Of a DNA stretch of 64,000 nt, positions 4,007 through 62,742 are shown piece by piece. The DNA lies in IMG/VR virus record IMGVR_UViG_3300028840_008185, positions 62,001 through 126,000 of that record. One strand, given 5' to 3'. The notes beneath the pieces were generated by a model. It was given only the letters and a program-made list of their open reading frames with translations. It had not been told where the DNA came from and did no database searches. The position numbers were made by a program, and so were the translations under genes. The first letter of the stretch is position 1, and each line of letters opens with the position of its first letter.

Positions 4007-4531
4007 TTACCCCGCAAAGAAAGAGATTGTAGAGAGTGCAATTGGCAACGCCATATAGATTATGGCCCCAACCGAAAGCGCCTTAAACAACTTCACAGGG
4101 AGATCCAAGCGCCGCTGAAATCTCCACATATCGCTCTCGTTCGGTTCTCTAAAGAACACAGACACAAAGCCAGTGCAGAAATCGATGAAGTTGAACCAAG
4201 TAAAAGTCAAGAATATAATTGAAGCAACTTTGTTAGTGATTGCAGCAGATAGTATGGCTGCCATGATTATGAACACAGCATTGACTATCTTTGGCATCAC
4301 TGACACCAGCGCCTTATCTTTATCCGTAAGTTCCTTGCTTTCTTCTGTCTTCTCGTATTTCACATGAGCGAAAGTGAATCGCCCAAGCTTCCAAGACGGA
4401 AATGGCCACAGCTTAAACTTCCACTTCCATCCTATATACCTGGTGAGGCCGTGCGATAGTTCGTGGATTGTGTTCTGAAGCAACCAGAACGGGATAAGTA
4501 AAACCAGAAATACTATCCATTTGGTTTCCAT
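4007..4531 (-). CDS. Membrane protein with HEXXH (M50-like peptidase)
   Basis: TIHELSHG inside a hydrophobic segment, several TM helices, NxxD-like NFIDF. Confidence 0.6.
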   Translation of the reverse strand: METKWIVFLVLLIPFWLLQNTIHELSHGLTRYIGWKWKFKLWPFPSWKLGRFTFAHVKYEKTEESKELTDKDKALVSVMPKIVNAVFIIMAAILSAAITNKVASIIFLTFTWFNFIDFCTGFVSVFFREPNESDMWRFQRRLDLPVKLFKALSVGAIIYMALPIALSTISFFAG

Positions 4532-5402
4532 CTTTTAAACTCCTCTCTCAAAATAAGTTGTATATCCGATCTTCCAGGGAAGATGTCGTGAAGCATAATG
4601 TTAATGACATCTATGGCCTGAGGCCCATAATTAAGCCATGGAAATAATTGGTCCACAATTAAGTCTACGATATTTTTGTTGTATCTACTTCTTTCCATTT
4701 TCTTTATTATCATTTTCTATTTGAGGTTTCCTCTCCCAACAAACATGCACGCAATTGATTATACAACATAGGTCTGGCGTGAGCAATAAAAGATGCTGGG
4801 CTTTCAAAGCTCCGATATGACTTCATGAGCCTTGATAAGAGCTGGTAAATTTCTGATGGCATGTCAAAATGGAACCAACTCATATGTTTGTTTTCAATCA
4901 TCCTAATTTCCACAGGCTAAGCTCCATTAGCTCAAAATTCAACCGCCACCTAATCGGATCACGCAGCCCATAATATCTTATAAAGCTGTGCAACTGAATT
5001 TGACGAACTAACAACACCAATGAATCATGAGTCCTTTCTCCATCTTTATACAAAGATGTATTATATACAGCCCGCCTTATTTCCATATATACCAATCTCT
5101 TAGTAACTGATAATGAAGCCACGTATGAAATATATCATACGGATTATAACCGCGATCATAGAACCAGACATTAAACCCAAAAATTGGCTTTATTTCCATT
5201 TGTCTAAAATTAGTTTCCATATCGCTGTTCGCGTCTCCAACAGAGAATTTCTTAACTCATGATGCAACTGCCTTTTGGCCGGGTCAAGATCTCCATTTTT
5301 TCTCCGCAACTTATTAACGAACGTGGGCATAAAGTCTGGGTGGCTGGAATCAAAATCAGTGTCATAAAGCCACGTTCCAAAAGGCTTGACTTTCTTGATC
5401 AA
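4513..5402 (-). CDS. Chain of five coupled microproteins (5190-5402, 5077-5199, 4898-5086, 4710-4913, 4513-4713)
   Basis: Starts MIKK, MEIKP, MEIRR, MEIRM, MIIKK; 5077-5199 (40 aa) found by hand; overlapping junctions. Confidence 0.6.
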
Positions 5403-6454
5403 AATTGAACCCCTGTGCCCATATTAATCGTTAAGCCGCCTGCCGTATCCAGACCAATCTGTGGACTTAGATATAGATTGGTCAGCAACGGCATCGGTTT
5501 GCCCAAGTTGAAGGCAATTGGGGCGAAGGCAAAGTGCCCAGCTCTCCTTTCTATGTTGTATCCTAAACTAAATCTAAACAATCTAAACCAACTATCAACC
5601 TTCGTCTCGCCGTAAGATGATAGTGATATTCCTAAGTCCAAGCCCATAGACAGGATGCTATCCGGTCTTCCTGGGCCTTGAGCAAAGCCATACACATTTC
5701 CGCCCGCAAAGAAGTTGGCATCCAACCTTGGATTGAGCCAGAACATTCTATTTGGAGGCGGAGCTTGCCTATACTGAGATGAAACAAGATTAACCTTGTA
5801 GGTTTTCTTGGACTTCTCAGGCATAGAGTATTCTAAATTATGATGTAATACAAGCTGGCCACTTTCTTTCTTACTTACAGCCGTGACGAGCTTATACTGA
5901 CGCTTATAGACCTCATAACTCCAAGGCTTCTTCTTCGCCGCATTAAACTGAACTTCAGTCAGCGGGGCCAGATTTGTATCTGTGACGAGCTTGATCTGTG
6001 GCTTCTTGGTATAGCCGTGCGTATCAACCAGGCGACCATCATCGCAAGTTTCGGGATTGGGGTTCTCTGGCCCCTCGCTGTCGCTTGCTTCCAGCCTGGA
6101 AACTTTCCTGCCGATTACGCCAACGGTCTTTCCAACCGCCGTGAGCCTTGTGCCAAGCTTCTTAATGTCACCCTCAAGCGCGGCTAGGTCTTCCTTCTTG
6201 AGCATACCCTTGAGATCATTTTCTAGATCATCCTTAGTCGCCCAAGTCGTACTGCTCCTCACGAGACTTTCCGTGAGCTTCTTAAACTGCGTAATATCAT
6301 TTCTTAACTGGGCGTTCTCCTCGGTCAAACTCTTATAGACATAGTATCCTGCGACAATACCTAATGCAACTAAGATGACCAGAACGAAGTTTAGAATTGC
6401 CGAAAATTTGCTACTTCCACTTTTAATAATCACAGTGCCTTCCTCTACAGACAT
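5399..6454 (-). CDS. Membrane-anchored coiled-coil protein with beta-rich C-terminal domain
   Basis: N-terminal TM, heptad region, alternating hydrophobic strands, terminal ...GTGVQF. Confidence 0.6.
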   Translation of the reverse strand: MSVEEGTVIIKSGSSKFSAILNFVLVILVALGIVAGYYVYKSLTEENAQLRNDITQFKKLTESLVRSSTTWATKDDLENDLKGMLKKEDLAALEGDIKKLGTRLTAVGKTVGVIGRKVSRLEASDSEGPENPNPETCDDGRLVDTHGYTKKPQIKLVTDTNLAPLTEVQFNAAKKKPWSYEVYKRQYKLVTAVSKKESGQLVLHHNLEYSMPEKSKKTYKVNLVSSQYRQAPPPNRMFWLNPRLDANFFAGGNVYGFAQGPGRPDSILSMGLDLGISLSSYGETKVDSWFRLFRFSLGYNIERRAGHFAFAPIAFNLGKPMPLLTNLYLSPQIGLDTAGGLTINMGTGVQF

Positions 6455-7710
6455 TTTAATTCCTCTTTTACGAGTTGTATTTTTCCTCTTACCATCATCT
6501 CATAAGCTCGATTTGGATCCAGAATATTGAGGCAATTATTAATCACCCAGAACAAACCTTCAAGAATATCATTCGTAAAAATACAATGCAACGGATTGTT
6601 GAATTCCGGTGCCTGTTGAACATATTTGGTTTCCATCAAAGCTTTTAGATGTCCCCTTTTTGTTCCACTTATTTCCATCCGCTTTCCATAGAGCGCGTAA
6701 AACCTCTTCTTAAAGGAGGCCAAGACCAATTCATATCCATAAGTTTAACTGCTATTGGCCTAAACTCATACTCGCCCAAACCATATCTCATGCGAAATTT
6801 ATTTTTAAGATACAGGGAGCTTAATTCGTATGTTACTTTAATCTCCATTCATTTTCCTCGTAGCCTCTTTCACCTTAGATTTCAAAAACCAAACTGGCGA
6901 TGTATCGAATGTGAAGCCATTTGAGTATCTTAGAGCCACATATGGCAACAAAACTTTCTCAATACCCTTGATTATAAAAGAGCCCCACTCATTATTGTCC
7001 ATATATGTATAACCAGTATTGTCAAGAAGGTGAACACCCTCAAGACCATAAATGAATCTCGCTTTTGCATGCCCGATTTTATTAGCTTCTATCATTTTTC
7101 ACTATCCGGCTGCCATTTCACGAACACCACATCCTTCTTGGCAGGGCACCATTCGGGCCAAGAGCTTTCATCTTCCAGCGCCTCGTCTGGAATCTCTTTG
7201 TGGATTGCCCGGCATAACTCTTTATCATTAAGCCGAGAGCGTAGCACGCAATCAGCACATCCGTAAATTTTAATGAACATTTCTATCCCCTCATGACTAC
7301 TCGTTCAAACCCCGCAAAACTTTCAAGCTCTTCGTAGAGCGACCTCTTGAAAAATACCTTCACGGCGAAGATTGGACTACTCACCGCATTTCTTAATTCA
7401 AATTCAAAACCAGAATCTTCCATTGCCCAGCGTATAGGCGTATGGAATCTTTCATATTTTAAGGGTCTAATAATCATAAGTATGGCCTATTATATCTCCA
7501 ACAGCGAAGGGGCCTATCAATTTGGTGCTTTCCAATTTCCAAAGAGTTAGGATCTAGGATTCTAAGCACATTTGCTATACGACTAGACAGCCCAATCCAT
7601 TCCATATGATAATCAAGCACGGAAGACATATTAAGTTTGAACAATATTCTTTGCCTGATATCGTTGGTTACAACACGCCGCATATTACTCCCAGTTTTCT
7701 CCATCACCAA
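6445..7710 (-). CDS. Run of small hypothetical proteins (6445-6678, 6669-6848, 6838-7095, 7092-7280, 7283-7477, 7474-7710)
   Basis: Coupled ORFs; 6669-6848 MEIKVTY (59 aa) found by hand; 7092 has CxxC/C/C. Confidence 0.55.
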
Positions 7711-8035
7711 CCTCTATCTTGATGTTCTCTGGTTTCATCATTTCTTCTATCTTGGCCTCAAGATCCCTGTGTCCCTGTAGACGAGCCGCAGCTTCAAGCC
7801 TGAGCCAAGATTGAAACTTCTCGCTTTCCACCAAGCGATTGAAAGCTATTTTCTTATTCTGTTCCTTAGACCTTTCGTCGCGGCTGATTCCTTCTGCGCC
7901 TGATGCCGTATGTCTTATTCTGCAAGCGGAGGATGTCTTGTCCCCTTTTTGGCCACCGTGTTTCCCTGCGCGAAAATACTTTATATCTAGATCTTTCTTC
8001 GTTATTGAAAAAAGCAGCTTTTTCTTTTTTGACAT
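7685..8035 (-). CDS. Stand-alone RF-1 domain peptidyl-tRNA hydrolase (GGQ)
   Basis: RAGKHGGQKGDKTSSACRIRH; RSKEQNKKIA; no codon-recognition domain. Confidence 0.85.
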   Translation of the reverse strand: MSKKKKLLFSITKKDLDIKYFRAGKHGGQKGDKTSSACRIRHTASGAEGISRDERSKEQNKKIAFNRLVESEKFQSWLRLEAAARLQGHRDLEAKIEEMMKPENIKIEVGDGENWE

Positions 8036-8260: not shown

Positions 8261-8894
8261 TCAGCATAACTCTTTCCTGAAAGACTCTATTATGTACTCT
8301 CGTATCGGCTGCCCGAGTCCAAATAAGGTGCGCCTCTTAGCCTCCATCTTGAAAGAGTAGCCAACTTGGCGCCTAAATCCCCAATAGAAAACATTACGCC
8401 TGGCATCTCTGTGAATTGGTTTGATCATGTTATTCCTCAAGCTGATCTATCAGGCTCCATTTTAATTCAGTGCGCGTATCTCCACTCAGATGCAATAATT
8501 CTGCTTGGATTCGGGTTCTTATTCCCCACACATCAATGGGCCAGTGCCGCATCTCCCACAGCCATCCAGCTTTCATGTAAGAACGACGGATGTAATCTAC
8601 AAGATGCATATGTCCCACTAGAGATATTGAGCGATGCACAACTTACCTCGACATACGCATGCAGTTTGACATAAGCACGGCCAGATTTACGCTCAAACCA
8701 CTAAGACCGCTTTGAAGCCTATCTACCACTCCTACATGATCTCTTACCACTATATCATAGCACATATAATCTCTAGGTTTTGAAATAATTACACCATTAC
8801 TTATCAGGCATGTTGATATTACAGGCTCGTCAAAAAACTCCCATAAACATTGTCTAAGCCCTTCGGGGCGTTTTAGAGATATTGAGCGATGCAC
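8261..8894 (-). CDS. Three microproteins (8261-8428, 8430-8639, 8643-8894)
   Basis: 8261-8428 MIKPIH found by hand; the other two both start MHRSISL. Confidence 0.5.
8619..8894. repeat. Exact 21-nt direct repeat (8619-8639 and 8874-8894)
   Basis: tagagatattgagcgatgcac occurs twice. Confidence 0.95.
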
Positions 8895-10261
8895 TCTTCC
8901 GGCTCCTTGTCCGCTGGTCCCTTATATATCGGAAATCTCAGAGCAAATACGCCGTCTTTCTCAGGCTGGCGAGAATCAAACTCGACCTTAATGGTCTGGT
9001 CAATCAGATCATCGCCTTCCTCGTAGAACTCTATGCGCTGAGGATCCGTGAAGCCACCACCACATTTACCACAATCAATCCACTCCCCAGTCTCAGGATG
9101 AACCTGCTTGATGTAGAATCCACCAAGTCTGCCCATATTCTTACCACTGCCTTCGTAGTAGCCAGTGATTACGAACTCATCTTCATACTTGGGCTTACGC
9201 TTCCATATACCATCCGGTCTCTGTGCCTTGCCGTCAAAACTATAGGCTTTATCACCATATACGGCATCGGCGTCTAGAGCAACAAAGCCTTCGGCTTTAA
9301 GCTCCTTGGCCAGCTCCAGATCGTCACCCGTGCTTGTCTCATAGATCTTGATTGGACCGATATGAAACTTCCGCAGGATCCCCTCACGCAACTTGCTCTC
9401 TCGGAGCTTTCTGCGGCGATCTGAGGCGAGTCCGGTGCTGAGTGCTAGTCTGTCATCTAATTTCTGGAAAATCTTCCTCAGGGCCGCCAGGCGGCTTCTC
9501 ACGGTCAGTCTTGATATGAGATCGGCTCCGCTATAGAAAGCGATGTCAAAAACGTAATAGGACACTTTCCCAAGAACTTCCTTATCCTTTTTGCCCTTGG
9601 GAAACTTTCCAAGTCCCTGATATGCCAAAGCTAAATCGGGATCAGAGCGACATATTCTTGAGGTTCCCAAGAAATCATCCGACCCATCGTCTTTCAATAG
9701 GGTCATTTCGCCAAGAAGAATTGTGTTGTTTGGAAGGTCTAAAAGCTCAACACTTTCAATAATATGTGGGAACTTCTCCGTCACCAGATCCATACGGCGG
9801 GAGTAAATCTCAACCTCGTCTTCCCGCTTCACAATGATGTGGCACATGCCATCGCGCTTGAGAGTCCAGATAGCCCTCCCATCTTCCTCAAGCTTGGCCA
9901 GTTTCTTATCTGAAATCTCCTTCTTCGGCTTGAAGAAACAGAGATGTTTTGGTAGAGGTTCATCAAAATCAATAGCCGTGGAAAGCTCTTCCACTGGTTC
10001 GCCGTCTATGTATTCAACATAGCCTTGCTCGCGCTTCTTCCTGATGTCTCTGCTAATGCAAAACTTTACATACTCTTCCGGCGTCTGATAATCGGAATGA
10101 CCTTCAACGCCGCAATCCCCAGGAGAATCGGAAGTCTCCTGCATGGCCCCATCCAACTGACCCCACTTAACGATGTAGGTTTCGGGGTCGTTGGGATCCA
10201 CACCAATAAACCACACTTGCGGGCGCTTATTGCGCCCTGTTGTCTTCCTGAACTCTCTCAT
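8873..10261 (-). CDS. lig: ATP-dependent DNA ligase with N-terminal WGR-like domain
   Basis: KRDG adenylation motif, LLGE, YYVFDI, EGFV, KRKP, OB fold (GSGKNMGRLGG...LRFP); N-terminal KWGQLDG...KKREQGY. Confidence 0.9.
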   Translation of the reverse strand: MREFRKTTGRNKRPQVWFIGVDPNDPETYIVKWGQLDGAMQETSDSPGDCGVEGHSDYQTPEEYVKFCISRDIRKKREQGYVEYIDGEPVEELSTAIDFDEPLPKHLCFFKPKKEISDKKLAKLEEDGRAIWTLKRDGMCHIIVKREDEVEIYSRRMDLVTEKFPHIIESVELLDLPNNTILLGEMTLLKDDGSDDFLGTSRICRSDPDLALAYQGLGKFPKGKKDKEVLGKVSYYVFDIAFYSGADLISRLTVRSRLAALRKIFQKLDDRLALSTGLASDRRRKLRESKLREGILRKFHIGPIKIYETSTGDDLELAKELKAEGFVALDADAVYGDKAYSFDGKAQRPDGIWKRKPKYEDEFVITGYYEGSGKNMGRLGGFYIKQVHPETGEWIDCGKCGGGFTDPQRIEFYEEGDDLIDQTIKVEFDSRQPEKDGVFALRFPIYKGPADKEPEECIAQYL

Positions 10262-10570
10262 CTCACTTTATCCTTGCGAAAAAAGCTCCTAAAGAACCAT
10301 CTATCAGTTTCGAGCCCGCCATCGCCAAGCACCCAATCTACATTTGCTTCAAGACTGGCCGGCAGGTTAAATCTAAGACCCAAATAGTAGCTCACGGGAG
10401 GCGCGTCTTTAATCTCCAATATTAATTCTCCTGGCTAATCGGTTGCGCATAAGCCAACGAAAATCACCACCCATGACTTTAATTCTGCCGCCCACAGGAA
10501 AAAGAAATGTAGGCACAAAAGAAAGAGGCACAATGATGTTCGTCCAGGTCAATCTGCGTTTAATTTCCAT
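10258..10570 (-). CDS. Two 53-aa MEIK microproteins (10409-10570; 10258-10419 with TTG start)
   Basis: Hand translation: MEIKRRLTW... and (M)EIKDAPP...; GGAG RBS before the TTG. Confidence 0.55.
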
Positions 10571-10821
10571 CATTCCAGTGCCTTAATTGAAAGTTCAGCC
10601 AAATTATCAAAGAGAAGAACAGAGCCAACGATGACAAAAGCCGCAAAAACCACCAAAATAATCATCCACATAACAAACTTTCTAGTGGCCTTCTTCTTGC
10701 TCTTTTTCATCAAGAGATCAAAGTCAGAAGTTATCTTCGCCCTTTTTCTTAACTCAGGTTCCACACCGACAACTTCCAATAAGAGATCAGCGGGCTCACG
10801 GTTTTTATCATCAAGGCTCAT
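10570..10821 (-). CDS. Single-TM hypothetical protein
   Basis: 83 aa, one hydrophobic helix. Confidence 0.6.
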   Translation of the reverse strand: MSLDDKNREPADLLLEVVGVEPELRKRAKITSDFDLLMKKSKKKATRKFVMWMIILVVFAAFVIVGSVLLFDNLAELSIKALE

Positions 10822-11111
10822 TTCTTCTTTCTCCTGTTGGCTTGTGCTCTCTGTCTTGCTTTTCTGCCGCGAGAACGACGCATCTTCTTAATAGCCTCAC
10901 GCCGCTCCCTCCTCTTTTTCTCGGAGGGCTTCTCTGCAAAGCGCCTGCGTTTGAGTTCAGCCAAAACGCCCTCATTAGACATCTTCTTTCTCAAAGCTCT
11001 AATCGCCCCTTCCAGATCTCCGTCCCTGACTTCCACCTCCAATGGCCTCACTCTGGGCTCTCTTTTCTCTTTCTTCTTCCAAGCTGGTCTTCTGTCGTCG
11101 CTCATTTTCAT
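10818..11111 (-). CDS. rpsU: Ribosomal protein bS21
   Basis: VEVRDGDLEGAIRALRKK...LKRRRFAEKPSEKKRR. Confidence 0.9.
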   Translation of the reverse strand: MKMSDDRRPAWKKKEKREPRVRPLEVEVRDGDLEGAIRALRKKMSNEGVLAELKRRRFAEKPSEKKRRERREAIKKMRRSRGRKARQRAQANRRKKK

Positions 11112-12727: not shown

Positions 12728-12728
12728 A

Positions 12729-12857: not shown

Positions 12858-13315
12858 TAGAAATACCAGTTTGGCCAAGGCCCCATTTTTGCTTCATCCC
12901 ACTGATTAAACACGAGCCTCAACTCTCGTCTTGCGATCAGCATTTCCTGCATCAGGCGAAAATAAGCCCGTTTGCGCTTTTCGTATTCAGCATCGCTTCT
13001 TATAGGGCGAGGTTTATACTGTCCCTCTTCCTTTCCACGAGGCGGGCGCACCAGCCCGGAAGAAACTGAAACTGGCTCGGGGGTGATAATTCCCCTGTCG
13101 ATTAGTTCCTGTCGCTTTCTAGCGCTGGCTTCCTTAGTTGATAGAGCCACGGGATTTCCCTTTTTGATAAATAGCTCTGGGTTTTTGGACGGTCTAATCA
13201 TACCTACATAGATGAGGGCATTCCTTCTAGCAGCACACTCTTCGTCAGTAGCAACCGGCAACTCATCATGAACATCATTAGCATTAAGAATTTTACTCAT
13301 CTTTGTTTCTCCCAA
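12857..13315 (-). CDS. Hypothetical protein with internal repeat
   Basis: ECAARRNALIYVGMIRP / EASARKRQELIDRGIITP. Confidence 0.6.
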   Translation of the reverse strand: MGETKMSKILNANDVHDELPVATDEECAARRNALIYVGMIRPSKNPELFIKKGNPVALSTKEASARKRQELIDRGIITPEPVSVSSGLVRPPRGKEEGQYKPRPIRSDAEYEKRKRAYFRLMQEMLIARRELRLVFNQWDEAKMGPWPNWYF

Positions 13316-14184
13316 AATCGTTTGCGTTCGTCGGGAACTTTATTCAAATTCTCCTCAGTGTTTAGTTTAGTATTATATACATTATCTATGCTAAATTCAA
13401 CTCCGTGAGACCTGATGTCTTCACGGTCAATGGCCTTTCTAGCGTAGTTCATTATGATGGTTGCGGCACTTACATTAACCTGCATATTTTGGGGCGCCGA
13501 GAGCGCCCTGTCTGCACAAGAAAGCTCGGAGTTGAAACCATCTTCACTGTCTATGAGTTCTGGATAGTGATCCATAACACAGGGCAAACTGAATTCTCCA
13601 ACCGCATTACCACTAAAAGGGCCAGCCTTTATAATTCCATAGTGTCCTCTCCTAGTTGGCGCGTAGCCACAGACAACCTGCCCCGCCTTTTCTTCGTTTC
13701 CAGAATCAATCCAGAACTTAGCATGAAAGTCTTCAGTTGTAAACCACTCATGTATTACCCTACGAGAGGCGTTATTATCCACACAGCCTATCACCATATA
13801 GGCAGAATCACTCCCGATTGAGTAGTGATTCAGAGCATCATTTATATCCTCCACCTTCTCTAAATCATTGGGGATTGCTTTAATCTCCAAACCAAAAGCG
13901 GAAGAATATCTTTCCGCCATCACCATGGCCTTGTTCTTGGAGATGTCCTGCATAATAAAGTGCTGTCTTTTAAGATTCTTTTCCTCGACCATATCTCCAT
14001 CGGCCAGAATTAGATTTACAGTTCTGCGCTCACCAGAATCGTTTTTGACTTTTACATACCTAGCCAAATGGGGGATCAAGTGCCCACCAGTCCCGCCACA
14101 ACCAATAACAAGAATGGTTCTGACGGGCCTATAGCCGGCCAGAGAATAAACTTTCTGGAGTATCTTAATTTTCTTCGCAGCCAT
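13297..14184 (-). CDS. ThiF/E1 ubiquitin-activating-like enzyme (PRTRC ThiF type)
   Basis: IGCGGTGG, DGDMVEEKNLKRQ, CVDN, WIDSGN, catalytic-type LSCAD. Confidence 0.92.
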   Translation of the reverse strand: MAAKKIKILQKVYSLAGYRPVRTILVIGCGGTGGHLIPHLARYVKVKNDSGERRTVNLILADGDMVEEKNLKRQHFIMQDISKNKAMVMAERYSSAFGLEIKAIPNDLEKVEDINDALNHYSIGSDSAYMVIGCVDNNASRRVIHEWFTTEDFHAKFWIDSGNEEKAGQVVCGYAPTRRGHYGIIKAGPFSGNAVGEFSLPCVMDHYPELIDSEDGFNSELSCADRALSAPQNMQVNVSAATIIMNYARKAIDREDIRSHGVEFSIDNVYNTKLNTEENLNKVPDERKRFWEKQR

Positions 14185-14185
14185 T

Positions 14186-16745: not shown

Positions 16746-16748
16746 GCC

Positions 16749-23461: not shown

Positions 23462-24401
23462 TAATTTACTACCTTGTCTTTATCCTCTAGAACCTCTTTG
23501 AAAAGTCTCTCGGCATCGTCGTAGCCCATCTTATAAAGCTGCCTAGCAAAATGGGCTGTGACCAACTGGAAGTTTTCTGCGGAAGGGCCAAAGATTTTCA
23601 GCTTCTCGCTCATAAGCGCAGACCAATCTTCCACGAGCTTCTGGTACCGCCAGTAAAGAGGATCCTCCACTCGCGGATTATATTTCTTTTCGTCGCTCAT
23701 TCTTTCATCTCCTCAAGCATAGCCGCATATTCAAGCACAGCTAAGCCTTGGTCTTCCGTAAAGCCGGCTTCTACTGCCGCTTCCCTATATCTTTCTTTCA
23801 TAGCGGCGAGCTGGGCATCTTCCACGGCCAAACCGTCCTCAATGTAAGAAGCCACGTCCTCTTTTGTAGGCATACTGATTTTAGATGTAGCTTCCAGAAG
23901 CTTCAAATAATCCCCATAGCCCATAAAGAAAAGGCGCTTGCCTATATCAAACGCCTTCTTCACAGCCAGTTTTGTCTCGTTGTACATTTTCACTCTTCTT
24001 TTGCTCTGATCGTGCCGTATTTGTCTATTCCCTTGTTCCAATCTTCATAGAGTTCTTCTTGCGTAACATCAAGCTCTAATTCCGCGTGTTCATATCCAAC
24101 CTCTTCATCCCACCCAACTCTCATATAATCGAAGCCCCCATCTACAAAGGTTTTTCCACACGAGCATTGGTGCCAATCGTGTCTTGCTCTGCTGTAGATT
24201 GTGTCCCCGCAGCCGAGACATTTTATTGCGAAAATCTTCATCTTTAAATCTCCCAAAGAAAAAATGTGCAGGGCGAAGCGCTCCGAAAGGTCTGCTTGGC
24301 CTTGCTAAAAGGTCCCAAAATGATACAAAAGGTATACCATCACCATTACGCGAACGACTGAGGCGTTCTGCAAGTGGATAAGTATAGACAGGCTCTATCA
24401 T
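23461..24401 (-). CDS. Small hypothetical proteins incl. Zn-finger 23990-24256 and MIEPV microprotein 24105-24401
   Basis: CLGCG...CSCG motif in 23990-24256. Confidence 0.5.
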
Positions 24402-35327: not shown

Positions 35328-35985
35328 GCAACCCTTCCTTGAGACAAGGTAAGAAACAGAGTCTTAAACATAAGATTCTGGCCCAAATCAGACCTATTTC
35401 TGGCAAAATTAACACCCATCCAGAATATTGCCGGGGATACAGCCCCGACATGAGGAGCAATGGACACTCGTAAGTCTGAAGTATAAACCAGTTTAATCAC
35501 TTTAGCCATTTTCTCAAACCCCAAGACACCAGACCTAGCAAAGTGTCGTCCTCATCGTCAAAGGTCCAAAGCTCATTTAGGTTGTTGAAAAACAAACCAG
35601 TGAGGAGACGCCAAAAGTTAAGGGTCCTTTTTGACGCAGAACGAATTGGCTCAATCATTTCCCCACCTGCTTAATCCCCATCCACCTAATGTCCCCATAA
35701 GTAGTTTGTGTCCAGCAAGAACTATGCTTGGTCTAATATAGTTCAACAGGAAGTTGCCCATATTATATGTGGCGGCACTCACTTGTTTCTCACTTAGCCA
35801 TTTTCGCCTGTGATCGGCCCAAATTGGAATTATCACCATGAGTAGCCCCAACAAAAATCTCTTGGACGAAGCGCATGCACAAATAAATCACCAAGATGGT
35901 ATAGGGGATGCGACTCAAACTGAAATGCAAACTGAACCCAGAGTTTATGGCGATGCCGGTGGTTATTACTATTATCTATTTTCAT
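35324..35985 (-). CDS. Four microproteins between kinase and PP2C (35324-35524, 35497-35658, 35651-35854, 35833-35985)
   Basis: Two found by hand: MIEPIRS (53 aa) and MKIDNS...KLWVQFAFQFE (50 aa). Confidence 0.5.
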
Positions 35986-44066: not shown

Positions 44067-44490
44067 TTACCACCACAAACTACCTCTCAGTTCTATGATT
44101 CTCTCTCTTATTAGTCTTCTATATTCCACGGCATCGAGCCCCTTAACAATAACATCTTCCACTATCTTATGGAAAAAGTTGGCGTAGGATATGTTGCCTA
44201 CCCGCATCTTGCTTGCGAAAAGATCATACATATCATGCCATATATCGTTCTTGAAGCCGCTGCCCCTATATGTTCTGGTTGGTTTAATTTCCATCTACCC
44301 GATCCTTAAGGATTTTACACTGGCACCAAAAATCTACAAACAAGAAATCCTCAAGGACATCGTAAGCGGGCCACTTGCCAGCAAATATATCACTGGCGAC
44401 ATGCCCCCAGAACATACAATACGGATAGAAAGTTCTATCTATTCTTTCATTACCTTCCACGCCCTTGATGTTCCTCTTTTCAATCTGCAC
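44067..44490 (-). CDS. Two microproteins (MEIKP 44067-44294; MQIEK 44284-44490)
   Basis: 11-nt overlap ATGGAAATTAA. Confidence 0.55.
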
Positions 44491-45542: not shown

Positions 45543-45543
45543 A

Positions 45544-45747: not shown

Positions 45748-46728
45748 CTATAGCAACGACTTGGTTTTCTTGCCCTTGGTCTTCTTGTGAAGCTTAGAGG
45801 CAGACTTCAGAAGCTTGCGATCCTCAGGCGGAGAAACCTTATGAATCGTCTTGAGCGATTTCATAACCGTCTCGACCTGATGTGGCTCCTGCCTATCCTT
45901 GATTTCCTCCTTGAAATACTTAATCTTATCGGTTTCTTTGGCCAGAATACCGAAGATTGTATCAACAACTCGGCCAGCTTCAGGCAGGATAGAGATATGG
46001 TCAGCACCAAGAACCTTTTCCCACTGTGAGTAGATGGCCTTATCGATTGGGCTCATGTCGTCAGTTCCAGTGGATCTGTAGGGCTTCCTGATCAGATAGA
46101 CCGAGAATTTTCTCTTAAGCTCCTCAAAAACATCCACAGAATTCATACGCTTCTGCATAGCGGTCTTAGCGAACTTCTCGCCAAGGCTCTTGTTGATTGT
46201 GTCGTAGAACCCTTCGTCACCAATGATGATACAAATCGGGTTAATGGCCTTGGGCATGTGGATGTTTCGGGCACAGTAAAGAGCAGCAATCTCGTAGGTC
46301 TCCTGCTTGGAGCCTCCACCACCACCCTCGATGACAAGCTCCTTGAGCTTCTCTTTGATGTCGGTGTCCTTTGAGAACTCCCTAATCTGGAATGGATAGG
46401 AGTCATTGCACATAGCATCGCCAATGGCTCCCCACGCAATCTCCATATCCTTGCCCAAATACTCTTTGGTTTCGTGCTCAAGATACGGGAGCTTTGAGAA
46501 CATGGTGGCTGGCCATGCACCCATGGAGCCCGTCACATCACAAAGAATAACAAGAGGTGCAGGGCTGTTGGTCGTAATCGAATCAGGAATCAGATCAGTG
46601 CTTCCCTTGTTCGCAGCCTTAGCATCACCATAGCTTCTATTAACATGTCGGTCATAGACCTTGCGGGCATCCGAAAAAGAGGTGTGCCCCTTCCATTTTC
46701 CTGGGTTATAATCAGCAGTTTCAGACAT
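45748..46728 (-). CDS. vWA domain protein
   Basis: CDVTGSM, GAIGD, EGGGG, ETYE, IIGDE. Confidence 0.75.
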   Translation of the reverse strand: MSETADYNPGKWKGHTSFSDARKVYDRHVNRSYGDAKAANKGSTDLIPDSITTNSPAPLVILCDVTGSMGAWPATMFSKLPYLEHETKEYLGKDMEIAWGAIGDAMCNDSYPFQIREFSKDTDIKEKLKELVIEGGGGGSKQETYEIAALYCARNIHMPKAINPICIIIGDEGFYDTINKSLGEKFAKTAMQKRMNSVDVFEELKRKFSVYLIRKPYRSTGTDDMSPIDKAIYSQWEKVLGADHISILPEAGRVVDTIFGILAKETDKIKYFKEEIKDRQEPHQVETVMKSLKTIHKVSPPEDRKLLKSASKLHKKTKGKKTKSLL

Positions 46729-46891
46729 TTTTGTTCTCCTTTTCATGTCTCCAATCATACAAAGTCGAATTCATATCCCAAGCCCAAGGAGCCACAACTT
46801 CCAAATCTCTTAATACTTGAGAGATAGTGGGACTCCAACCTTTAAGCTTGAGCCTAGCTTTAGCTTTACGCATCTCCAATGCTTCTATCAT
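46721..46891 (-). CDS. 56-aa microprotein
   Basis: Hand translation MIEALEM...; overlaps both neighbours. Confidence 0.45.
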   Translation of the reverse strand: MIEALEMRKAKARLKLKGWSPTISQVLRDLEVVAPWAWDMNSTLYDWRHEKENKNV

Positions 46892-50810: not shown

Positions 50811-50821
50811 TAATCCTCCTG

Positions 50822-52733
50822 TTAATCCTCGACCGAGATATAAAAATCGATCTTCTTACCTTCTCTATCAAAACACTTACATTTGCCAAAAGTTCCGTGG
50901 ACATCACGGAACATGAAAGTAGATCCCACATTGTCGGATTGCTTTTGCTTGCACATCTGTTTGCATCTGGCCCTCAGGCTGTTGTAGTTTTTACCGCAGT
51001 CAGAGCACCCCGATGTTGCCAAAACCAAGACAACTAAAACAGCTTTCCAAAACATTTCTCCTCCTTCAAGTTGCACACATTATAGGCAACATCACGCACA
51101 GTGCAACTACAACAAACATAAAAATAAAAGGGAGCCAGTCTCTACACCATTCGCCCATTTTACCTCTTTTAATCAGCGACCATACACCACTCATTAGAGT
51201 AGTCTTTGATTTCTTTGGCTTTCTCTCTTATCTCATCCGCAGTCCAGAGCAAAGCCTCCTTGTTTCCACCTGCTAAATTATGAACAAAGCGAGTGGGGGT
51301 CAAGGGGCTTTTTGGCCCCGATGCAGCAAGAACGGCGACAAGAATATGACTACACCCAGTTGCCAATATTCTTGCAGTCTCAGCTTCATCGATGTCTGGG
51401 TCGGCTAAGTATGCATCTAAAGTATATACGACTACGGCAACATTATCGACTTCCGCCGCAAAGGCTCTTTTTAGATAGAGTTTAACCGATTCCCTGTGGC
51501 TTCGAATTACATAATCTTCTGGATTCATTGTCCTTTTACCGACACCAGAAGAAACCCACTTGCAACATTTATCGGGCAGGACTATGTAGGCTTGACCTGG
51601 CTGGCGACAAGAACTCCAATCGAACTTCTCTACTTCCTCGTACAAAACGCGCAGGAAATCCATTTGGTCTTGCCACCAAACCTTTGTGCCTACCGTTCCT
51701 TCTTCCTGAAAGGCTGTCAAGATGTCAGCGAATCCAATTTTAGTTCCCATGCAACCACCTCCTTATACAGCCAATTCTCAAGTAGCCTGAAAAGACGCGA
51801 ATCAAATTTGGTCATCACCGTGGCGCCAAAGTTCAAATAAGATCTACTATCAAAGGCGCCGCAGGCTGCGCTTCGCCGCTTGGAAAGAATACAAATTTCT
51901 ATATCCATGCGGGCTGCCCCCATTTCTTTTCCCAAAAACCATCATGAACGGTATTAACTACCGTATGCGAAAGCTCACCCAAAAGTGGAGCCATCAAGGG
52001 ATAGAAAGGGTTGCCATTGAAACCCACCCAACTACAATAGCCGACCTGATTATGTATCCTCCCCTTGTTCGGGCTCATCATCTCCAGTTTCATCTTCTTC
52101 CTCAAGCTCAGCCAAGTAGTCCTCGGTTCGCATCTTTCTTTGTCTTTTCTCACGCTTATCTTTATGTGGGCCAGCTTTACCGTGAAGCCCCTGTTCTTCT
52201 CTACTTATCTTCTTCAATGCTTTTAGTCTGTCCCACTTCTTTTTCTTAGCCATTTCTTCTACCCGGTATTTTCATTTTCGAAAGAACCAATCTTCTTATT
52301 TCATTGCCGGCAGGCAACCAAGCACTAACAAGCTTTTTCCTAATTACTTCCCACAAAGGAACAGAGATATAATCCTCGATTTCTGGATTGTATCTTCCTC
52401 GCAGACAAATCATTTGCGTCCATACTTTCTTATCACATCGGCTATGCCGTCGGCTTCCACTTCCTCTAATTTATCACCGGCCAACTCAGCTGCTTCTTTC
52501 TTAATGCTCTCGGCGTCACCTTCTTCAATATCTCCAGATAGTTGCCCGTAATTGATTAGGTCTTCGCCCATCCTAAACATAGACACAGCGACATCTCTAA
52601 AGGTAAATCCCATTTCTAAAGCCTTCGATACAATAAAAAGGCTGGCCATAGCGCAGAAGGTCTTGAACTTTTTCTCATTGGTTTGTGGCTCTGTGCGATC
52701 CTCATACGGAATCTTGGTCATTATCATCTCCAA
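50822..52733 (-). CDS. Hypothetical proteins incl. lipoprotein 50822-51076, 51169-51750, microproteins 51717-51908 and 51899-52153, 52050-52253, 52410-52733
   Basis: Coupled ORFs. Confidence 0.5.
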
Positions 52734-53235
52734 ACAAATCTTCTAAATATCTCCACATCTTAGCAACTCTAGGATCCATTTCCTCCGTGCTGTGAAGTGC
52801 GTTATAAAAACCTGGCCACTCCTTCTTATACATATCAAAGAAGCCAGAGTCGGTGCCTTTGGAAAATTCCATGTTCGCTATTCGGTCAGCAAGCTTCAAC
52901 GCCAGAGCATCTCTGGACTGCCTGATTTTCGCATAGGTTTTCTCGTGTCTTTCTTTGCGGTTCCTTCCCATCTCGTTGGTCACGGCATAAACGATGTCCG
53001 CAATTTCCTGACCAAACCCACACTTGATTTGGTCGTAGGAAATTTTTGTATCCTCGATTACATCATGTAGCCACGCCGCAGTCCTGAGCCTGAAATCTTC
53101 CACAAAGCCAAATCTATTTAGGGCCATCTCTACTTGTTCGAGGTGATAGGTATAATCGTGGGTGCCGTATTTCTGCTTACAGTGAGCAACCTCACCAAAC
53201 CATTTAGCTTTTTCACGAAGGTCTTTCCAACACAT
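52702..53235 (-). CDS. HD-domain hydrolase, Mesh1/SpoT-like
   Basis: YTYHL, AAWLHDVIEDT, LKLADRIANM. Confidence 0.85.
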   Translation of the reverse strand: MCWKDLREKAKWFGEVAHCKQKYGTHDYTYHLEQVEMALNRFGFVEDFRLRTAAWLHDVIEDTKISYDQIKCGFGQEIADIVYAVTNEMGRNRKERHEKTYAKIRQSRDALALKLADRIANMEFSKGTDSGFFDMYKKEWPGFYNALHSTEEMDPRVAKMWRYLEDLFGDDNDQDSV

Positions 53236-53401
53236 TTTTGATTCTCCATTTTTCTACAGCAAACCTATACCCGCACCGATTTCTAAGCTGGTCCCACATA
53301 ATTGACCAATATTGATCCCAATGATCAGGATTAGCAATATAAGTACTTATGGAACCCCATCTCTGTTCCTTTCTCTTCCAAAAATCAGTATTTATTTCCA
53401 T
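53213..53401 (-). CDS. MEI microprotein
   Basis: MEINTDFW...WDQYWSIMWDQLRNR. Confidence 0.55.
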   Translation of the reverse strand: MEINTDFWKRKEQRWGSISTYIANPDHWDQYWSIMWDQLRNRCGYRFAVEKWRIKNVLERPS

Positions 53402-54256: not shown

Positions 54257-54328
54257 TTAGAACTTTTCGCTTGACGATTTGGATTTACGAATTAAGTTGA
54301 TCATAGAAGCCCAGAGAAGTATATACAT

Positions 54329-55309: not shown

Positions 55310-55871
55310 TTTTCTTATCTCCGTCCAGAATTAAGCACTCAAATGGAATATCATCGGACAATACAATTCTATCATCCGCACTCTTATAGAACTTCACACC
55401 TTTATACCTGGCGTGAGATATAGCCACCTCAATCAATACTACATGCCTGCTGCGCCTACGAGCAGCCTCAATAGTAATGTCTTTGTCGTATGATAAATGA
55501 ACCTTCTGCCTGTTCATAGCACAGAGTCCAGATTTCTTGATGTCTTTTAGAGCTTCTTCTGTGGTCGCATGATAAATAGGCTTATCAGGCAAAATCTCTG
55601 TGTAGCCCTCGACCTCAATCGAATGCCCATGACCAGCTCTAATATAGCCCCCCTCTAACTCAAACCTCGTCTTAACTTTTGGATCCTTAGACGGACGGGT
55701 TAGAGAAATAACATCTTGTTTTGATACACTAAACTTCATCTTGGCGTTTAGCTTTTTCAACAGGTCATCCAGTTTGCAGCACCCTCTTGAATCCAGCTCC
55801 AAATCGCCCGGCTTGTGCCGAAGCAGCAAGCTCATATATTTAGACAGCTTTTTCTTATCCTGGGATTTCAT
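55302..55871 (-). CDS. kptA: RNA 2'-phosphotransferase Tpt1/KptA
   Basis: MSLLLRH, RFE, IRAGHGHSI, YHAT, MNRQKVHLS. Confidence 0.92.
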   Translation of the reverse strand: MKSQDKKKLSKYMSLLLRHKPGDLELDSRGCCKLDDLLKKLNAKMKFSVSKQDVISLTRPSKDPKVKTRFELEGGYIRAGHGHSIEVEGYTEILPDKPIYHATTEEALKDIKKSGLCAMNRQKVHLSYDKDITIEAARRRSRHVVLIEVAISHARYKGVKFYKSADDRIVLSDDIPFECLILDGDKKNV

Positions 55872-56599
55872 TAGACCCTCTCCTAAATACCCTTTTACTG
55901 TTAAGTTTCATAGTTTCATCATGGACACGACTGCTCAAAAAGTTATGAGATGTATAAATGTGTCGGAGGATGTGTATCCCTTCACAATAATAGACAGAGT
56001 GCCAATGAACAAAGGCACCCTGAAATGCATTGGCTTTTCTAGGCTTTATCATACTTCACAAACACCGGATTGGGGTGCTCCCTCATCTCTGTCCGTTTCT
56101 TATACTCAATCCACTCAATCCTGGGCAGAAGAGCTTGTCCATTTCTTTTGATGAGCACATGATGAGGTCCGATTTTAGAAATCTCGTTGTCCGCCTCACA
56201 TCTCCAGCATTTCTTTCTGCTACATCTATAGCCCACAAAGTATTGTTTTTGTTTGTTTCCAGTCTTCTTGTCCTCTACTTCGGCCAAGAAAGAGACATGA
56301 ACAAGAGTTAGAGGAGCCTCTCCATCACACCAGCCCGTAAAATGATAGTCTGGATGCCAGCCGAGTTGCTCCCCATTCTCAAAAGCACGAGCGATTTCAT
56401 CAAAAGTTAGTGGCTTCATTTTTTATCCTTGATTATAAACCGAAATGACATGACGCCGAAACCGCACCACCTCTTCGTCCCAGAGCTGAGACTTTAAGTT
56501 GCCACCAAATATATCACTTAAACTAAAAAGAAAGGGAAGGGCAGGAATCCAGACCGAAGCAGTAACCATGTTTCTATTGCGCCGCTCGATTATTTTCAT
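55855..56599 (-). CDS. Small proteins 55855-56052, 56039-56419, 56423-56599
   Basis: MIKP and MKII starts; coupled. Confidence 0.5.
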
Positions 56600-56775
56600 A
56601 TTATTTTCCTGAGCTGCCCCCAAAGTTGAGACTCAAGCCGACTCCAAAGCTGATTCCCAAGCTGAGGTTCAAACTGAAACCCAAGCTGAAACCTAATCTG
56701 AGCCTCAACCTGAGCCTGAGCCTCAACCTGAACCTGAGCCCAAAGCCGACTCTTAGGCTGAGATCTTATTTCCAT
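56596..56775 (-). CDS. 59-aa tetrad-repeat microprotein
   Basis: MEIRSQPKSRLWAQVQVEAQAQVEAQIRFQLGFQFEPQLGNQLWSRLESQLWGQLRKII; degenerate 12-nt repeat. Confidence 0.7.
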   Translation of the reverse strand: MEIRSQPKSRLWAQVQVEAQAQVEAQIRFQLGFQFEPQLGNQLWSRLESQLWGQLRKII

Positions 56776-59860: not shown

Positions 59861-59902
59861 CTCGGTTTCATTATTTATCCGCCCGCTCGCCCTACCCCTA
59901 CT

Positions 59903-61036: not shown

Positions 61037-61074
61037 TTGTGGCCCCTGTTATAACTATAACAATTTTTCTTAGG

Positions 61075-61482: not shown

Positions 61483-61521
61483 CGATTTTTCTCCTTAAGC
61501 CGCAACAAAGGCTTTGTTAAT

Positions 61522-61566
61522 AAGAGCGAAAAAAGGTCGATCTCCCTCTCTACATGCGCGATTTTT
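61522..61566. promoter_or_regulatory. 45-bp dispersed intergenic motif, copy B
   Basis: 35/45 identical to 19037-19081. Confidence 0.6.
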
Positions 61567-62426
61567 TAATCTTGAAAGCTCATCCTTGATACGACAATAC
61601 CTCCTATCACTAAGATTGAAGCAACCCAGAGAAGCCGATTCCAAGCACCTCCGAACCAAACAGTTGAAATGATTAAAGCCAGAATTGGAATAGCATACAA
61701 GCTGCTTGATGACTTCTGGCCAATCCTCCTAACCACGCTAATCCAAAAAGAATAAGACAAAGCCATATGAACAATTGCGAAAACGAGGATAAGTGCTGTG
61801 GAGCACAGCGAAGAGACATTGTTCCAGTTAAATGTCCCAGTCAAGTGCCCAACAAAGAAAGCGGCAACACTACTGACGCCCTGAGCAACTCCCTGTAGAA
61901 AGAATCTTACTTTCTCGTGCTCCTCTTCAAGGGAAGCACTATATCCCGCCCATAGAAAAGCAGCCACAATTCCAAAGAGTATGCCAATAATATCATCAAC
62001 TACAATATCCCCAATCGCCGGGGCAAGTATGACGGCAACTCCGAGAAACCCCATCACGCAGCCGACAAAAGCATTCTTCGAAAGCTTCTCTCCCCTTCTC
62101 CTGGCTATGAAGACAACCAGAAGTAATGGCCAGAGATAGTTGGCAAGAATGGCGTATTGAATTGTGAGACAGAAATAGATGGCCAGGAGAACAAAGATGT
62201 CGTAAAAGCCGTTGAGAAGCGCCAGCTTAAAGAACTTGCCCCTATCTACTTGCACTTTTGATTCGCCCTTAGCGAAACCTATGAAGCACAATATAGAGGC
62301 TGCGATGCCGTTATACATAGTAGCCACAGCAGCCCAATCTCCGTTCGAACAGACAAGCATCTGTTTTACAAAGGGGCTCGCTGAAGCCCAGACGATAATT
62401 ATGAACCAAAAAAGGATGTGAAACAT
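61566..62426 (-). CDS. EamA/DMT family transporter
   Basis: About 10 TM helices, two internal repeats; ANYLWP, GEKLS. Confidence 0.85.
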   Translation of the reverse strand: MFHILFWFIIIVWASASPFVKQMLVCSNGDWAAVATMYNGIAASILCFIGFAKGESKVQVDRGKFFKLALLNGFYDIFVLLAIYFCLTIQYAILANYLWPLLLVVFIARRRGEKLSKNAFVGCVMGFLGVAVILAPAIGDIVVDDIIGILFGIVAAFLWAGYSASLEEEHEKVRFFLQGVAQGVSSVAAFFVGHLTGTFNWNNVSSLCSTALILVFAIVHMALSYSFWISVVRRIGQKSSSSLYAIPILALIISTVWFGGAWNRLLWVASILVIGGIVVSRMSFQD

Positions 62427-62742
62427 TTCAACTCAGATCCGCACCGATGGGTTAAAGGCCCCGTATGTAATGGCCCAAAAATAACATACCGGCTCTTCCT
62501 CCAGAGAGAATTCTCCACCAAGAGCAGGCCCATAAACGAAGTCCTAAACCCCGGCCAGGTCTTCACACGCCTGGATTTTATCTCCACAACAACACCAACT
62601 CTCTTTCAAGCTCGCTTCTCAGTGGAAAGGAAATAATCGCCCTGAAAGGAGCACGACATCTATACTTCATATCTGCCCTCTTAAATACCACCTCACTTAC
62701 AGACGCCTCAGCTGGATACATGAAAACTGGTTCAATAACCAT
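62399..62742 (-). CDS. Two microproteins (MEIKS 62399-62587; MVIEPV 62578-62742)
   Basis: 10-nt overlap GTGGAGATAA; second found by hand. Confidence 0.55.

What the first reader, a model, noticed from the sequence alone, without database searches (positions are those of the whole stretch)
4513..62742. About 25 hypervariable MEI[K/R] microproteins chained by a start/stop overlap motif
Seen: 40-100 aa ORFs starting M-E/Q/D/I/K-I-K/R/E or MIEP/MIKP, with Trp/Arg-rich amphipathic C-termini, are scattered in runs (4513-5402, 6445-6848, 7283, 8261, 10258-10570, 24105, 35324-35985, 44067-44490, 46721, 51717, 53213, 55855-56775, 62399-62742). Many fall under the 60-aa cut-off. The same 10-mer encodes both the end of one gene (W-K/R/I-stop) and the start of the next: ATGGAAATAA at 5077, 5190 and 6669; GTGGAGATAA at 62578; ATGGATATAG at 51899. 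An 11-nt variant (G-N-stop) sits at 44284. Sub-motifs recur at distant loci (IEPV[F/Y]xYP at 24401 and 62742; L[N/R]ILDPN at 6445 and 7474). Inference: a self-expanding, rapidly diversifying small-protein cassette family, e.g. host-protein or anti-defence inhibitors, with the overlap motif as insertion or recombination anchor.
Basis: partly seen in the sequence, partly recalled or inferred. Interest (0 to 1): 0.75.

Follow-up and report, generated by a model that had tools for sequence, protein, structure and literature searches.

The report
Small phage genes sharing a start/stop junction
A huge environmental phage carries about two dozen real but fast-evolving small genes that begin Met-Glu-Ile and often overlap the previous gene's stop; the pattern spreads at least partly by local duplication across gene junctions, they are not one demonstrable protein family, and their function is unknown.

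Summary
The window is part of a huge phage genome: a 318-kb assembly whose identical locus also lies on a 452.6-kb contig. Nearly all genes are on the minus strand.

- **Motif excess.** ATGGAAATAA occurs 10 times on the coding strand against 1-2 expected, and 8 of these are small-ORF starts. N-terminal Met-Glu-Ile occurs 23 times against about 8 expected.
- **Arrangement.** These genes cluster in arrays, and 57% overlap the upstream gene by 7 nt or more, against 21% of other genes.
- **Same ten bases.** Trp-Lys/Arg-stop and Met-Glu-Ile are two readings of one decamer.
- **Real genes.** Ten small genes have orthologues in close relatives, all with pN far below pS. dN is 0.07-0.57 against 0.05-0.11 for core genes.
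- **Lineage-specific.** Relatives at 65% core identity or less lack the arrays.
- **Not one family.** Beyond the first 4-7 residues, homology appears only within local subgroups.
- **Mechanism seen.** One relative shows a tandem duplication across a junction that made a chimeric gene. One-gene indels and swaps break at the junctions.

Function is unknown. Pfam, PHROGs, the ESM Atlas and Foldseek gave nothing, and the two models are low-confidence three-helix bundles. I read this as a variant of phage hyperplastic regions.

The parts
4513..4713 (-). Small gene, 66 aa, MIIKK..., ends RWKPNG and overlaps the next start (ATGGAAACC...) by 19 nt
   Evidence: Orthologues in L010, L012 and L060 with an invariant DQLFPWLNYGPQ core. 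pN 0.28 against pS 0.56. AF2 model is three helices, pLDDT 68.
4710..4913 (-). Small gene, 67 aa from GTG (MEIRMIENK...) or 63 aa from ATG at 4901
   Evidence: 75% identical to L010 12293-12487. pN 0.14 against pS 0.50. L010 has one extra gene unit inserted exactly at this start.
4898..5086 (-). Small gene, 62 aa, MEIRR...; its start lies in the ATGGAAATAA junction at 5077-5086
   Evidence: 66% identical to L010 11923-12114. pS is only 0.31 against about 0.65 elsewhere, and dN/dS is 0.58. The nucleotide homology block ends exactly at its start and stop.
5077..5199 (-). Small gene, 40 aa, MEIKP..., ends WYIWK-stop inside the next gene's start
   Evidence: 56% identical to L012 11571-11696, which ends WYIWR-stop in ATGGAGATAG.
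5190..5402 (-). Small ORF, 70 aa, TTG start in a TTGA overlap with the 351-aa core gene; ends DKWK-stop in ATGGAAATAA
   Evidence: Weak N-terminal paralogy to neighbouring units (hhalign 32% to L010_11750).
6445..6678 (-). Small gene 'Y', 77 aa, MEISG...
   Evidence: N-terminal similarity to L010 9572 and 9799. Its junction with gene X is ATGGAAATAA.
6669..6848 (-). Small gene 'X', 59 aa, MEIKV..., ends SGWK-stop; the best-conserved member
   Evidence: 86% identical to L010, 63% to L012, plus L060 and L061. dN/dS 0.04. Only 3 relatives in 1.84 billion proteins. AF2 model is three helices, pLDDT 61.
6838..7095 (-). Small gene, 85 aa, MIEAN..., ends NGD-stop in an 11-nt overlap ATGGAGATTAA
   Evidence: 37-40% identical to L010 9163-9417. 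pN 0.40 against pS 0.72.
7283..7477 (-). Small gene, 64 aa, MIIRPLKYERFHTP...
   Evidence: Orthologues in L010 (59%), L060 and L061. hhalign 70.6% probability to the 4513 family.
8261..8428 (-). Small ORF, 55 aa, MIKPIHR...
   Evidence: No orthologue found in the relatives.
10258..10570 (-). Two chained small ORFs: MEIKRR... (10409-10570, with a TM-like segment) and TTG-MEIKD... (10258-10419), joined by the 11-nt overlap TTGGAGATTAA
   Evidence: The first is 61% identical over 31 aa to L010 6069. TM-like stretch.
24105..24401 (-). Doubtful ORF, MIEPVYTYP..., overlapping the better gene 23990-24241 by 137 nt
   Evidence: Its only similarity is a 15-aa N-terminal match to 62578-62742.
35497..35658 (-). 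Small ORF, 53 aa, MIEPIRS..., ends RKWLK
   Evidence: coding score is positive. No relatives were available.
44067..44490 (-). Two chained small ORFs: GTG-MQIEKR... (68 aa) and MEIKPTR... (75 aa), joined by the 11-nt overlap ATGGAAATTAA
   Evidence: The 75-aa protein matched only itself in a word-based search of 5.8 billion proteins, a search that also missed known relatives of another member.
46721..46891 (-). Small ORF, 56 aa, MIEALE...
51717..51908 (-). Small ORF, 63 aa, MDIEIC...; its start lies in ATGGATATAG, which ends the upstream ORF with W-I-stop
53213..53401 (-). Small ORF, 62 aa, MEINTD...; ATGGAAATAA start with no overlap (the upstream stop abuts it)
56423..56775 (-). Two small ORFs: MEIRSQ... 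(59 aa, made largely of a 12-nt tandem repeat) and MKIIER... (58 aa)
   Evidence: Nine copies of the 12-nt repeat.
62399..62742 (-). Two chained small ORFs: MVIEPVF... (54 aa, ends LLWR-stop) and GTG-MEIKSR... (62 aa), joined by GTGGAGATAA
8619..8894 (-). Perfect 21-nt direct repeat (8619-8639 and 8874-8894), which is the ligase gene's last 7 codons plus stop, bracketing a 255-nt unit with its own ORF
   Evidence: I read this as a footprint of duplication or insertion at a gene end.

Best explanation
These are lineage-specific accessory genes of a huge phage. They sit in variable slots between conserved core genes and are translated from long one-strand operons by stop/start coupling. The recurring decamer is a dual-coding gene junction: ATG-GAR-ATA-A read as Met-Glu-Ile, and A-TGG-ARA-TAA read as Trp-Lys/Arg-stop. 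The arrays change by tandem segmental duplications that span a junction, which copies the junction and creates chimeric genes, and by gain, loss or replacement of whole gene units. The bodies of the genes then diverge quickly. The junction changes more slowly because it is read in two frames and also carries the initiation context. This would explain why unrelated-looking proteins share only their first 3-7 residues and a C-terminal Trp. Shown: the genes are real; the motif is enriched and clustered; one duplication and the junction-bounded indels and replacements. Inferred: that this process accounts for all copies, and that the products are dispensable host-interaction proteins.
For: Coding status: pN is far below pS in 10 of 10 small-gene pairs with relatives whose GC content differs by 6-7 points. 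Lineage restriction: arrays are present in L010/L011, L012-L014, L060 and L061, and absent in relatives at 65% core identity or less. Coupling: overlaps are the genome's norm (4 nt x68, 1 nt x36, 8 nt x35, 11 nt x23). This class has overlaps of 7 nt or more in 57% of cases against 21% (p = 4e-5), and 8 adjacent pairs against 1.5 expected. Shine-Dalgarno pairing is present but weaker than in other genes. Duplication: L010 9478-9581 and 9705-9808 are a 104-nt direct repeat (71% identity, 227 nt apart) spanning the 3' end of gene X, the junction and the 5' end of gene Y. It yields the chimera L010 9572-9796. A one-gene indel and a cassette replacement have homology blocks that end within 3 nt of junctions. 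A 21-nt perfect repeat of the ligase 3' end brackets a 255-nt unit. No nucleotide conservation extends beyond the motif. Members are of unlike kinds: predicted soluble three-helix proteins, one with a TM-like segment, and one built from a 4-residue repeat.
Against: Only one duplication is caught in the act, and it is in a relative, not in the window. Orthologous junctions and N-termini switch between lineages: the X-to-Y junction is ATGA in L012 and L060 but ATGGAAATAA in the window and L010, and ortholog groups vary among MEI, MII, MIE, MKL and MGI. The motif is therefore gained and lost, which inheritance alone does not predict. GAA and ATA are only mildly over-used (p = 0.02 and 0.05). Five copies of the motif do not overlap a stop or lie far from any array. 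No expression data exist. Orthologues were obtained only for window positions 4.5-10.6 kb.
Confidence: 0.55

Rival explanations
1. Convergent translation signal: the ORFs are unrelated, and ATGGARATHA is selected independently at each start. The reason would be that an A-rich, unstructured start, with the stop 7-8 nt downstream of the AUG, favours initiation or termination-reinitiation, possibly with the phage's own bS21 and other translation factors.
For: The motif appears and disappears among orthologues. Codon choice is biased towards A-rich GAA and ATA. Predicted start-region structure is weaker and SD pairing weaker than in other genes. Ile at position 3 and Lys at position 4 follow partly from embedding TAA. 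The phage encodes bS21 and an RF-1-domain protein.
Against: Large genes do not share the preference: MEI occurs in 4 of 287 large genes against 19 of 336 small ones. Glu-Ile coupling exceeds the product of the position-specific frequencies. The similarity extends to Pro at position 5 and basic residues at 6-7, beyond the overlap. The 10-nt overlap is otherwise rare in this genome. A junction is seen being copied by duplication.
Confidence: 0.2
2. One ancient protein family, or a shared N-terminal functional tag: M-E-I-K/R-(P) would be a targeting, processing or degradation signal on diverse small effectors, comparable to the capsid-targeting sequence of T4 internal proteins. This is the sense of the reader's cassette family.
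For: All synonymous codons are used, which suggests conservation at the amino-acid level. An extended consensus M-E-I-[KR]-[PV]-[RI]-[KRF] exists. The N-terminal 8 residues are predicted to be disordered tails ahead of three-helix bodies. Composition is shared, being W/R-rich with net positive charge.
Against: There is no profile similarity beyond the N-terminus for most pairs. The tag is not conserved within ortholog groups. It is only 3-7 residues long with no recognisable protease site. Part of it is dictated by the overlapping stop.
Confidence: 0.15
3. Spurious ORFs in non-coding or decaying DNA, with W/R/L-rich compositions typical of off-frame translation.
For: Coding scores are lower than for other genes (0.22 against 0.30 bits per codon). 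A few members are doubtful. No expression data exist.
Against: pN is far below pS for all ten tested pairs, although synonymous sites are near saturation. Frames and lengths are conserved across five related genomes. External gene callers also called them.
Confidence: 0.04

Closest known systems
Hyperplastic regions of T4-type phages with PeSL-mediated modular shuffling (Arbiol et al. 2010, PMC2839356; Comeau et al. 2014, PMC4122927)
   Same: Small ORFan genes are packed in variable slots between conserved core blocks. Close relatives differ by insertion, deletion and replacement of single gene units. A short recurring motif sits at the unit boundaries.
   Different: PeSLs are intergenic cassettes made of a sigma-70-like promoter and a stem-loop terminator. 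Here there is no intergenic DNA, promoter- and terminator-like sites are at chance level, and the recurring element is a 10-11-nt stretch read in two frames with no conserved flanks.
Translational coupling through overlapping stop/start codons (ATGA, TAATG and longer overlaps); established knowledge
   Same: The start codon lies within or next to the upstream stop. SD-like sequences are embedded in the upstream gene's last codons. Genes are chained on one strand.
   Different: In this genome the 10-nt class is almost entirely one specific decamer, tied to one class of small genes.
T4 internal proteins with a shared N-terminal capsid-targeting sequence (recalled from my own knowledge, not checked here)
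   Same: Variable, small, basic proteins share only a short conserved N-terminus.
   Different: The T4 signal is about 10 residues long and ends in a prohead-protease site. Here the shared part is 3-7 residues, varies among orthologues, and no cleavage or packaging evidence exists.
Gene 'accordions' and tandem multigene families of large DNA viruses (recalled from my own knowledge)
   Same: Tandem duplication is followed by rapid divergence of accessory genes.
   Different: Units here are about 180 nt, the duplications span gene junctions and create chimeras, and no selective agent is known.

Membership tests
   blastp all-against-all found one MEI-MEI pair at E < 1e-3. hhalign with 7 residues trimmed gave MEI-MEI mean 9.3 against control 8.8, with one pair above 50%. 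Ortholog-group profiles gave 1 of 351 pairs above 50% and 8 above 20%, mostly within one array. There is no nucleotide similarity either.
   L010 genes X, the chimera and Y match at E 2e-12 and 9e-8. Slot-A N-terminal block MEIKPI..WFY matches at E 5e-5 to 1e-3 in a small database.
T4-type PeSL shuffling cassettes | Intergenic promoter plus stem-loop terminator flanking ORFans | tested here: not met
   15 promoter-like sites against 15.4 expected, and 4 terminator-like sites against 6.0. Genes overlap rather than leaving intergenic DNA.
T4-type PeSL shuffling cassettes | Indel and replacement breakpoints between close relatives coincide with the recurring motif | tested here: met
   Homology blocks end within 3 nt of junctions at window 5086, 4899-4902, 5202 and 5078. 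The sample is small, and selection would also favour gene-boundary breakpoints.
Translationally coupled overlapping genes | Start codon overlapping or abutting the upstream stop on the same strand, with an SD in the upstream coding sequence | tested here: met
   Actual reinitiation cannot be tested with these tools.
N-terminal targeting tag (T4 CTS-like) | Conserved N-terminal peptide with a protease site, and presence in virions | not testable with these tools
   Only a 3-7-residue consensus exists, and it varies among orthologues.
Diversity-generating retroelement targets ('hypervariable') | Template and variable repeat pair near the variable genes | tested here: not met
   No long near-identical repeats lie in the arrays. 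Contigs from three runs are identical. A reverse transcriptase was not searched for.

The most novel reading that the evidence does not exclude
The dual-coding decamer (Met-Glu-Ile / Trp-Lys-stop) could be a functional module rather than a passenger. It would be a coding-embedded counterpart of T4 PeSLs or integron attC sites, serving both as a microhomology for in-frame duplication, excision and exchange of about 180-nt gene cassettes and as a reinitiation site. Any newly inserted sequence would then be expressed at once, making it an engine for new small genes in huge phages.
Probability: 0.2. Interest if true: 0.7.

Novelty: new variant of a known kind. Interest (0 to 1): 0.45.

Why it matters
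Huge phages carry hundreds of tiny unannotated genes, many below usual calling cut-offs. This case shows that a recognisable subset are real, selected genes. It also gives a worked example of how such genes multiply: a duplication spanning a gene junction copies a ready-made start/stop module and produces a chimeric new gene. If the junction proves to be an active recombination or reinitiation module, it would be a new route of gene birth and exchange in phages. It would also be a practical marker for finding small accessory genes, possibly host-takeover or counter-defence genes, in metagenomes.

Tried and rejected
- **Known families.** Pfam and PHROGs on ten members gave no credible hit. The ESM Atlas gave no feature hits and only generic helical look-alikes.
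- **Folds.** Foldseek of the better AF2 model against BFVD and PDB gave nothing below E = 4. The models themselves are low-confidence (pLDDT 61 and 68).
- **Word-based homologue search.** Two small proteins returned only themselves. The tool also missed relatives I already held, so this does not show they are ORFans.
- **Hidden paralogy.** An iterative HMM from the gene-X family found no other member in the genome. A nucleotide-level test for frame-shifted paralogy was no better than controls.
- **C-terminal amphipathicity.** Not significant.
- **Promoters and terminators.** At chance level.
- **Population variation.** Logan contigs from three DNA runs were identical to the window.
- **Expression.** No served RNA run holds the locus.
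- **Relatives for the 44-56 kb loci.** None found in genome contigs or IMG/VR, and no near match in the phage collection.
- **Other readings.** Alternative genetic codes and programmed frameshifting were considered and dropped. Core genes are intact under table 11, and each unit has its own conserved start codon.
- **RiPP precursors.** Rejected, because the shared part is only 3-7 residues and no modifying enzymes are adjacent.
Full report
**Setting.** The window is bases 62,001-126,000 of a 318-kb single-contig assembly with 45.8% GC. Almost every long ORF lies on the minus strand. The identical locus also sits on a 452.6-kb JGI metagenome contig and on 130-220-kb Logan contigs at about 175x depth.

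The gene content is that of a huge phage:
- a tail-protein hit, ribonucleotide reductase, a helicase and a PrkA-like kinase;
- DNA ligase, a NAMPT-like enzyme and a CCA-adding enzyme;
- a Lon-like protease, bS21, an RF-1-domain protein, and a ThiF / Prok-E2 pair.

This fits the huge phages described in PMC7162821 and the bS21 phages of PMC9723584. No record in the phage collection is close.

- RTGGAWATAR occurs 9 times in the window against 1.1 expected.
- Genome-wide, ATGGAAATAA occurs 10 times on the coding strand against 1-2 expected under Markov orders 1-5 (p = 2e-6). Eight of the ten are starts of small ORFs. The 11-nt forms ATGGAAATTAA and ATGGAGATTAA occur 4 and 3 times against about 0.3 expected each.
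- With my own gene calls (623 genes, 336 of 100 aa or fewer), Glu-Ile is the commonest dipeptide after the initiator Met. It occurs 23 times against 7.9 expected (p = 7e-6), and 19 of the 23 are small proteins.
- A second N-terminal type, M(V)IEP / MIKP, recurs. The combined consensus is M-E-I-[KR]-[PV]-[RI]-[KRF].
- The class is Trp- and Arg-rich and net basic, and 46% have a Trp in the last six residues against 13% of other small proteins.
- Members are clustered (8 adjacent pairs against 1.5 expected). They are chained by overlaps of 7 nt or more in 57% of cases against 21%.

I could not confirm that the C-termini are amphipathic. The two recurring sub-motifs are only weak local matches. 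Two of the roughly 24 ORFs look doubtful.

**What the decamer is.** ATG-GAR-ATA-A read from base 1 gives Met-Glu-Ile. Read from base 2, A-TGG-ARA-TAA gives Trp-Lys/Arg-stop. The 'W-K/R-stop' and 'MEI' features are therefore the same ten bases. The 11-nt form, AT-GGA-RAT-TAA, gives Gly-Asp/Asn-stop.

Overlaps are the rule in this genome: 4 nt x68, 1 nt x36, 8 nt x35, 11 nt x23. The 10-nt class, however, consists mostly of this one sequence.

Ile at position 3 and Lys at position 4 are partly forced by embedding TAA. Glu at position 2, and Pro and basic residues at positions 5-7, are not forced. All synonymous codons are used, with only mild excess of GAA and ATA. Nothing outside the motif is conserved at the nucleotide level. 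Shine-Dalgarno pairing is present but weaker than for other genes. Promoter- and terminator-like sites are at chance.

**Are these real genes?** I searched with the conserved 351-aa neighbour gene (5399-6454) and found 94 relatives. From these I fetched five close genomes with 80-84% core identity and 36-39% GC.

Ten small genes in window positions 4.5-10.6 kb have orthologues there, at 40-90% amino-acid identity, with frame and length preserved. In every pair pN (0.07-0.40) is far below pS (0.31-0.73). dN is 0.07-0.57 against 0.05-0.11 for core genes. They are coding and under purifying selection, and most evolve two to five times faster than the core.

For the remaining loci (24-63 kb) no relatives could be obtained. 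Their status rests on coding score and context alone.

**Distribution.** Relatives at 65% core identity or less lack the arrays and MEI-type small ORFs. In most of these, the 351-aa gene is followed directly by the homologue of the 174-aa gene 4007-4531. The arrays are therefore an innovation of a narrow clade.

**One family?** Not demonstrably.
- Pairwise blastp finds almost nothing among members.
- An HMM of the best-conserved member finds no paralogue elsewhere in the genome. It finds only three relatives among 1.84 billion representative proteins.
- With seven N-terminal residues removed, hhalign scores among members equal those of control small proteins.
- With ortholog-group profiles, only 1 of 351 pairs exceeds 50% probability, and 8 exceed 20%. 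Most of these lie within one array and are confined to the first 14-36 columns.
- No frame-shifted nucleotide paralogy is detectable.
- Members are heterogeneous: two low-confidence three-helix models with disordered N-terminal tails, one protein with a TM-like segment, and one built from a 12-nt repeat.

Local paralogy survives.

**How the pattern spreads.** Relative L010 carries a 104-nt direct repeat (71% identity, 227 nt apart). It covers the 3' half of gene X, the junction ATGGAAATAA and the 5' end of gene Y. The result is X, a chimeric gene with a Y-like N-terminus and an X-like C-terminus, and then Y, with the junction present twice.

Other events between the window and its relatives show the same unit structure:
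- L010 has exactly one extra gene unit. It is bounded by two similar starts, ATG-GTA-GTT-GAA-AA and ATG-ATA-ATT-GAA-AA.
- Between the window and L012, two genes are replaced by one unrelated gene. The homology ends at the junction decamer.
- In the window, a perfect 21-nt copy of the ligase 3' end brackets a 255-nt unit.

These events show that arrays change by whole units and that duplications can carry the junction along.

Against pure inheritance, the orthologous X-to-Y junction is ATGA in L012 and L060. N-termini also switch among MEI, MII, MIE, MKL and MGI within ortholog groups. Some pressure, either initiation context or recombination at the motif, probably also acts.

**Function.** Unknown. 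Pfam, PHROGs, the ESM Atlas and Foldseek gave nothing, and no RNA data exist. By analogy with the hyperplastic regions of T4-type phages (PMC2839356, PMC4122927), I infer dispensable host-interaction proteins. This step is inference only.

**Verdict.** The closest known kind is the phage hyperplastic region with modular shuffling, combined with ordinary translational coupling. The variant here is that the recurring boundary element is a dual-coding start/stop decamer rather than an intergenic regulatory cassette. I rate it as a new variant of a known kind, with moderate interest.

Noticed in passing
window 8619-8639 and 8874-8894: A perfect 21-nt direct repeat, equal to the last seven codons plus stop of the DNA ligase gene, is repeated 255 nt downstream. 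Two successive ORFs therefore begin with the same seven codons.
   Followed up: partly
window 56627-56761: Nine tandem copies of a 12-nt unit inside the small ORF 56596-56775 give a four-residue xQLx repeat protein. A QLWGQLR match lies in another MEI-type ORF at genome position about 164.5 kb.
   Followed up: partly
window 7685-8035, 10818-11111, 42047-43456: The phage encodes translation-related genes: an RF-1-domain protein, ribosomal protein bS21 and a CCA-adding enzyme. Close relatives also carry IF3, a peptide deformylase with a SEC-C motif, and Cpn60.
   Followed up: partly
window 13297-14265 and 15226-15918: A ThiF (E1-like) gene and a Prok-E2_D gene lie close together, suggesting a ubiquitin-like conjugation module.
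   Followed up: no
window 46888-47892 and 35972-36805: There is a fusion of a DnaJ domain with a Ser/Thr protein kinase domain, and a separate PP2C-type phosphatase.
   Followed up: no
L010 11073-11741: A GIY-YIG homing-endonuclease-like gene is inserted in a close relative, directly after the 351-aa core gene and at the head of the small-gene array. It is absent from the window.
   Followed up: no
window 4898-5086 versus L010 11923-12114: This one small gene has much lower synonymous divergence (pS 0.31) than its neighbours (about 0.6-0.7). This may indicate a more recent exchange of the cassette between lineages.
   Followed up: no
whole assembly (G000) versus L016: The assembly holding the window is 318 kb, but the identical locus lies on a 452.6-kb metagenome contig. 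The assembly may therefore be incomplete.
   Followed up: no
genome 167,472-167,825 (outside the window): A 117-aa ORF contains two MEIK-type units fused in frame, with MEIKP at the start and MEIKV after residue 61. It looks as if a stop between two cassettes was lost.
   Followed up: no
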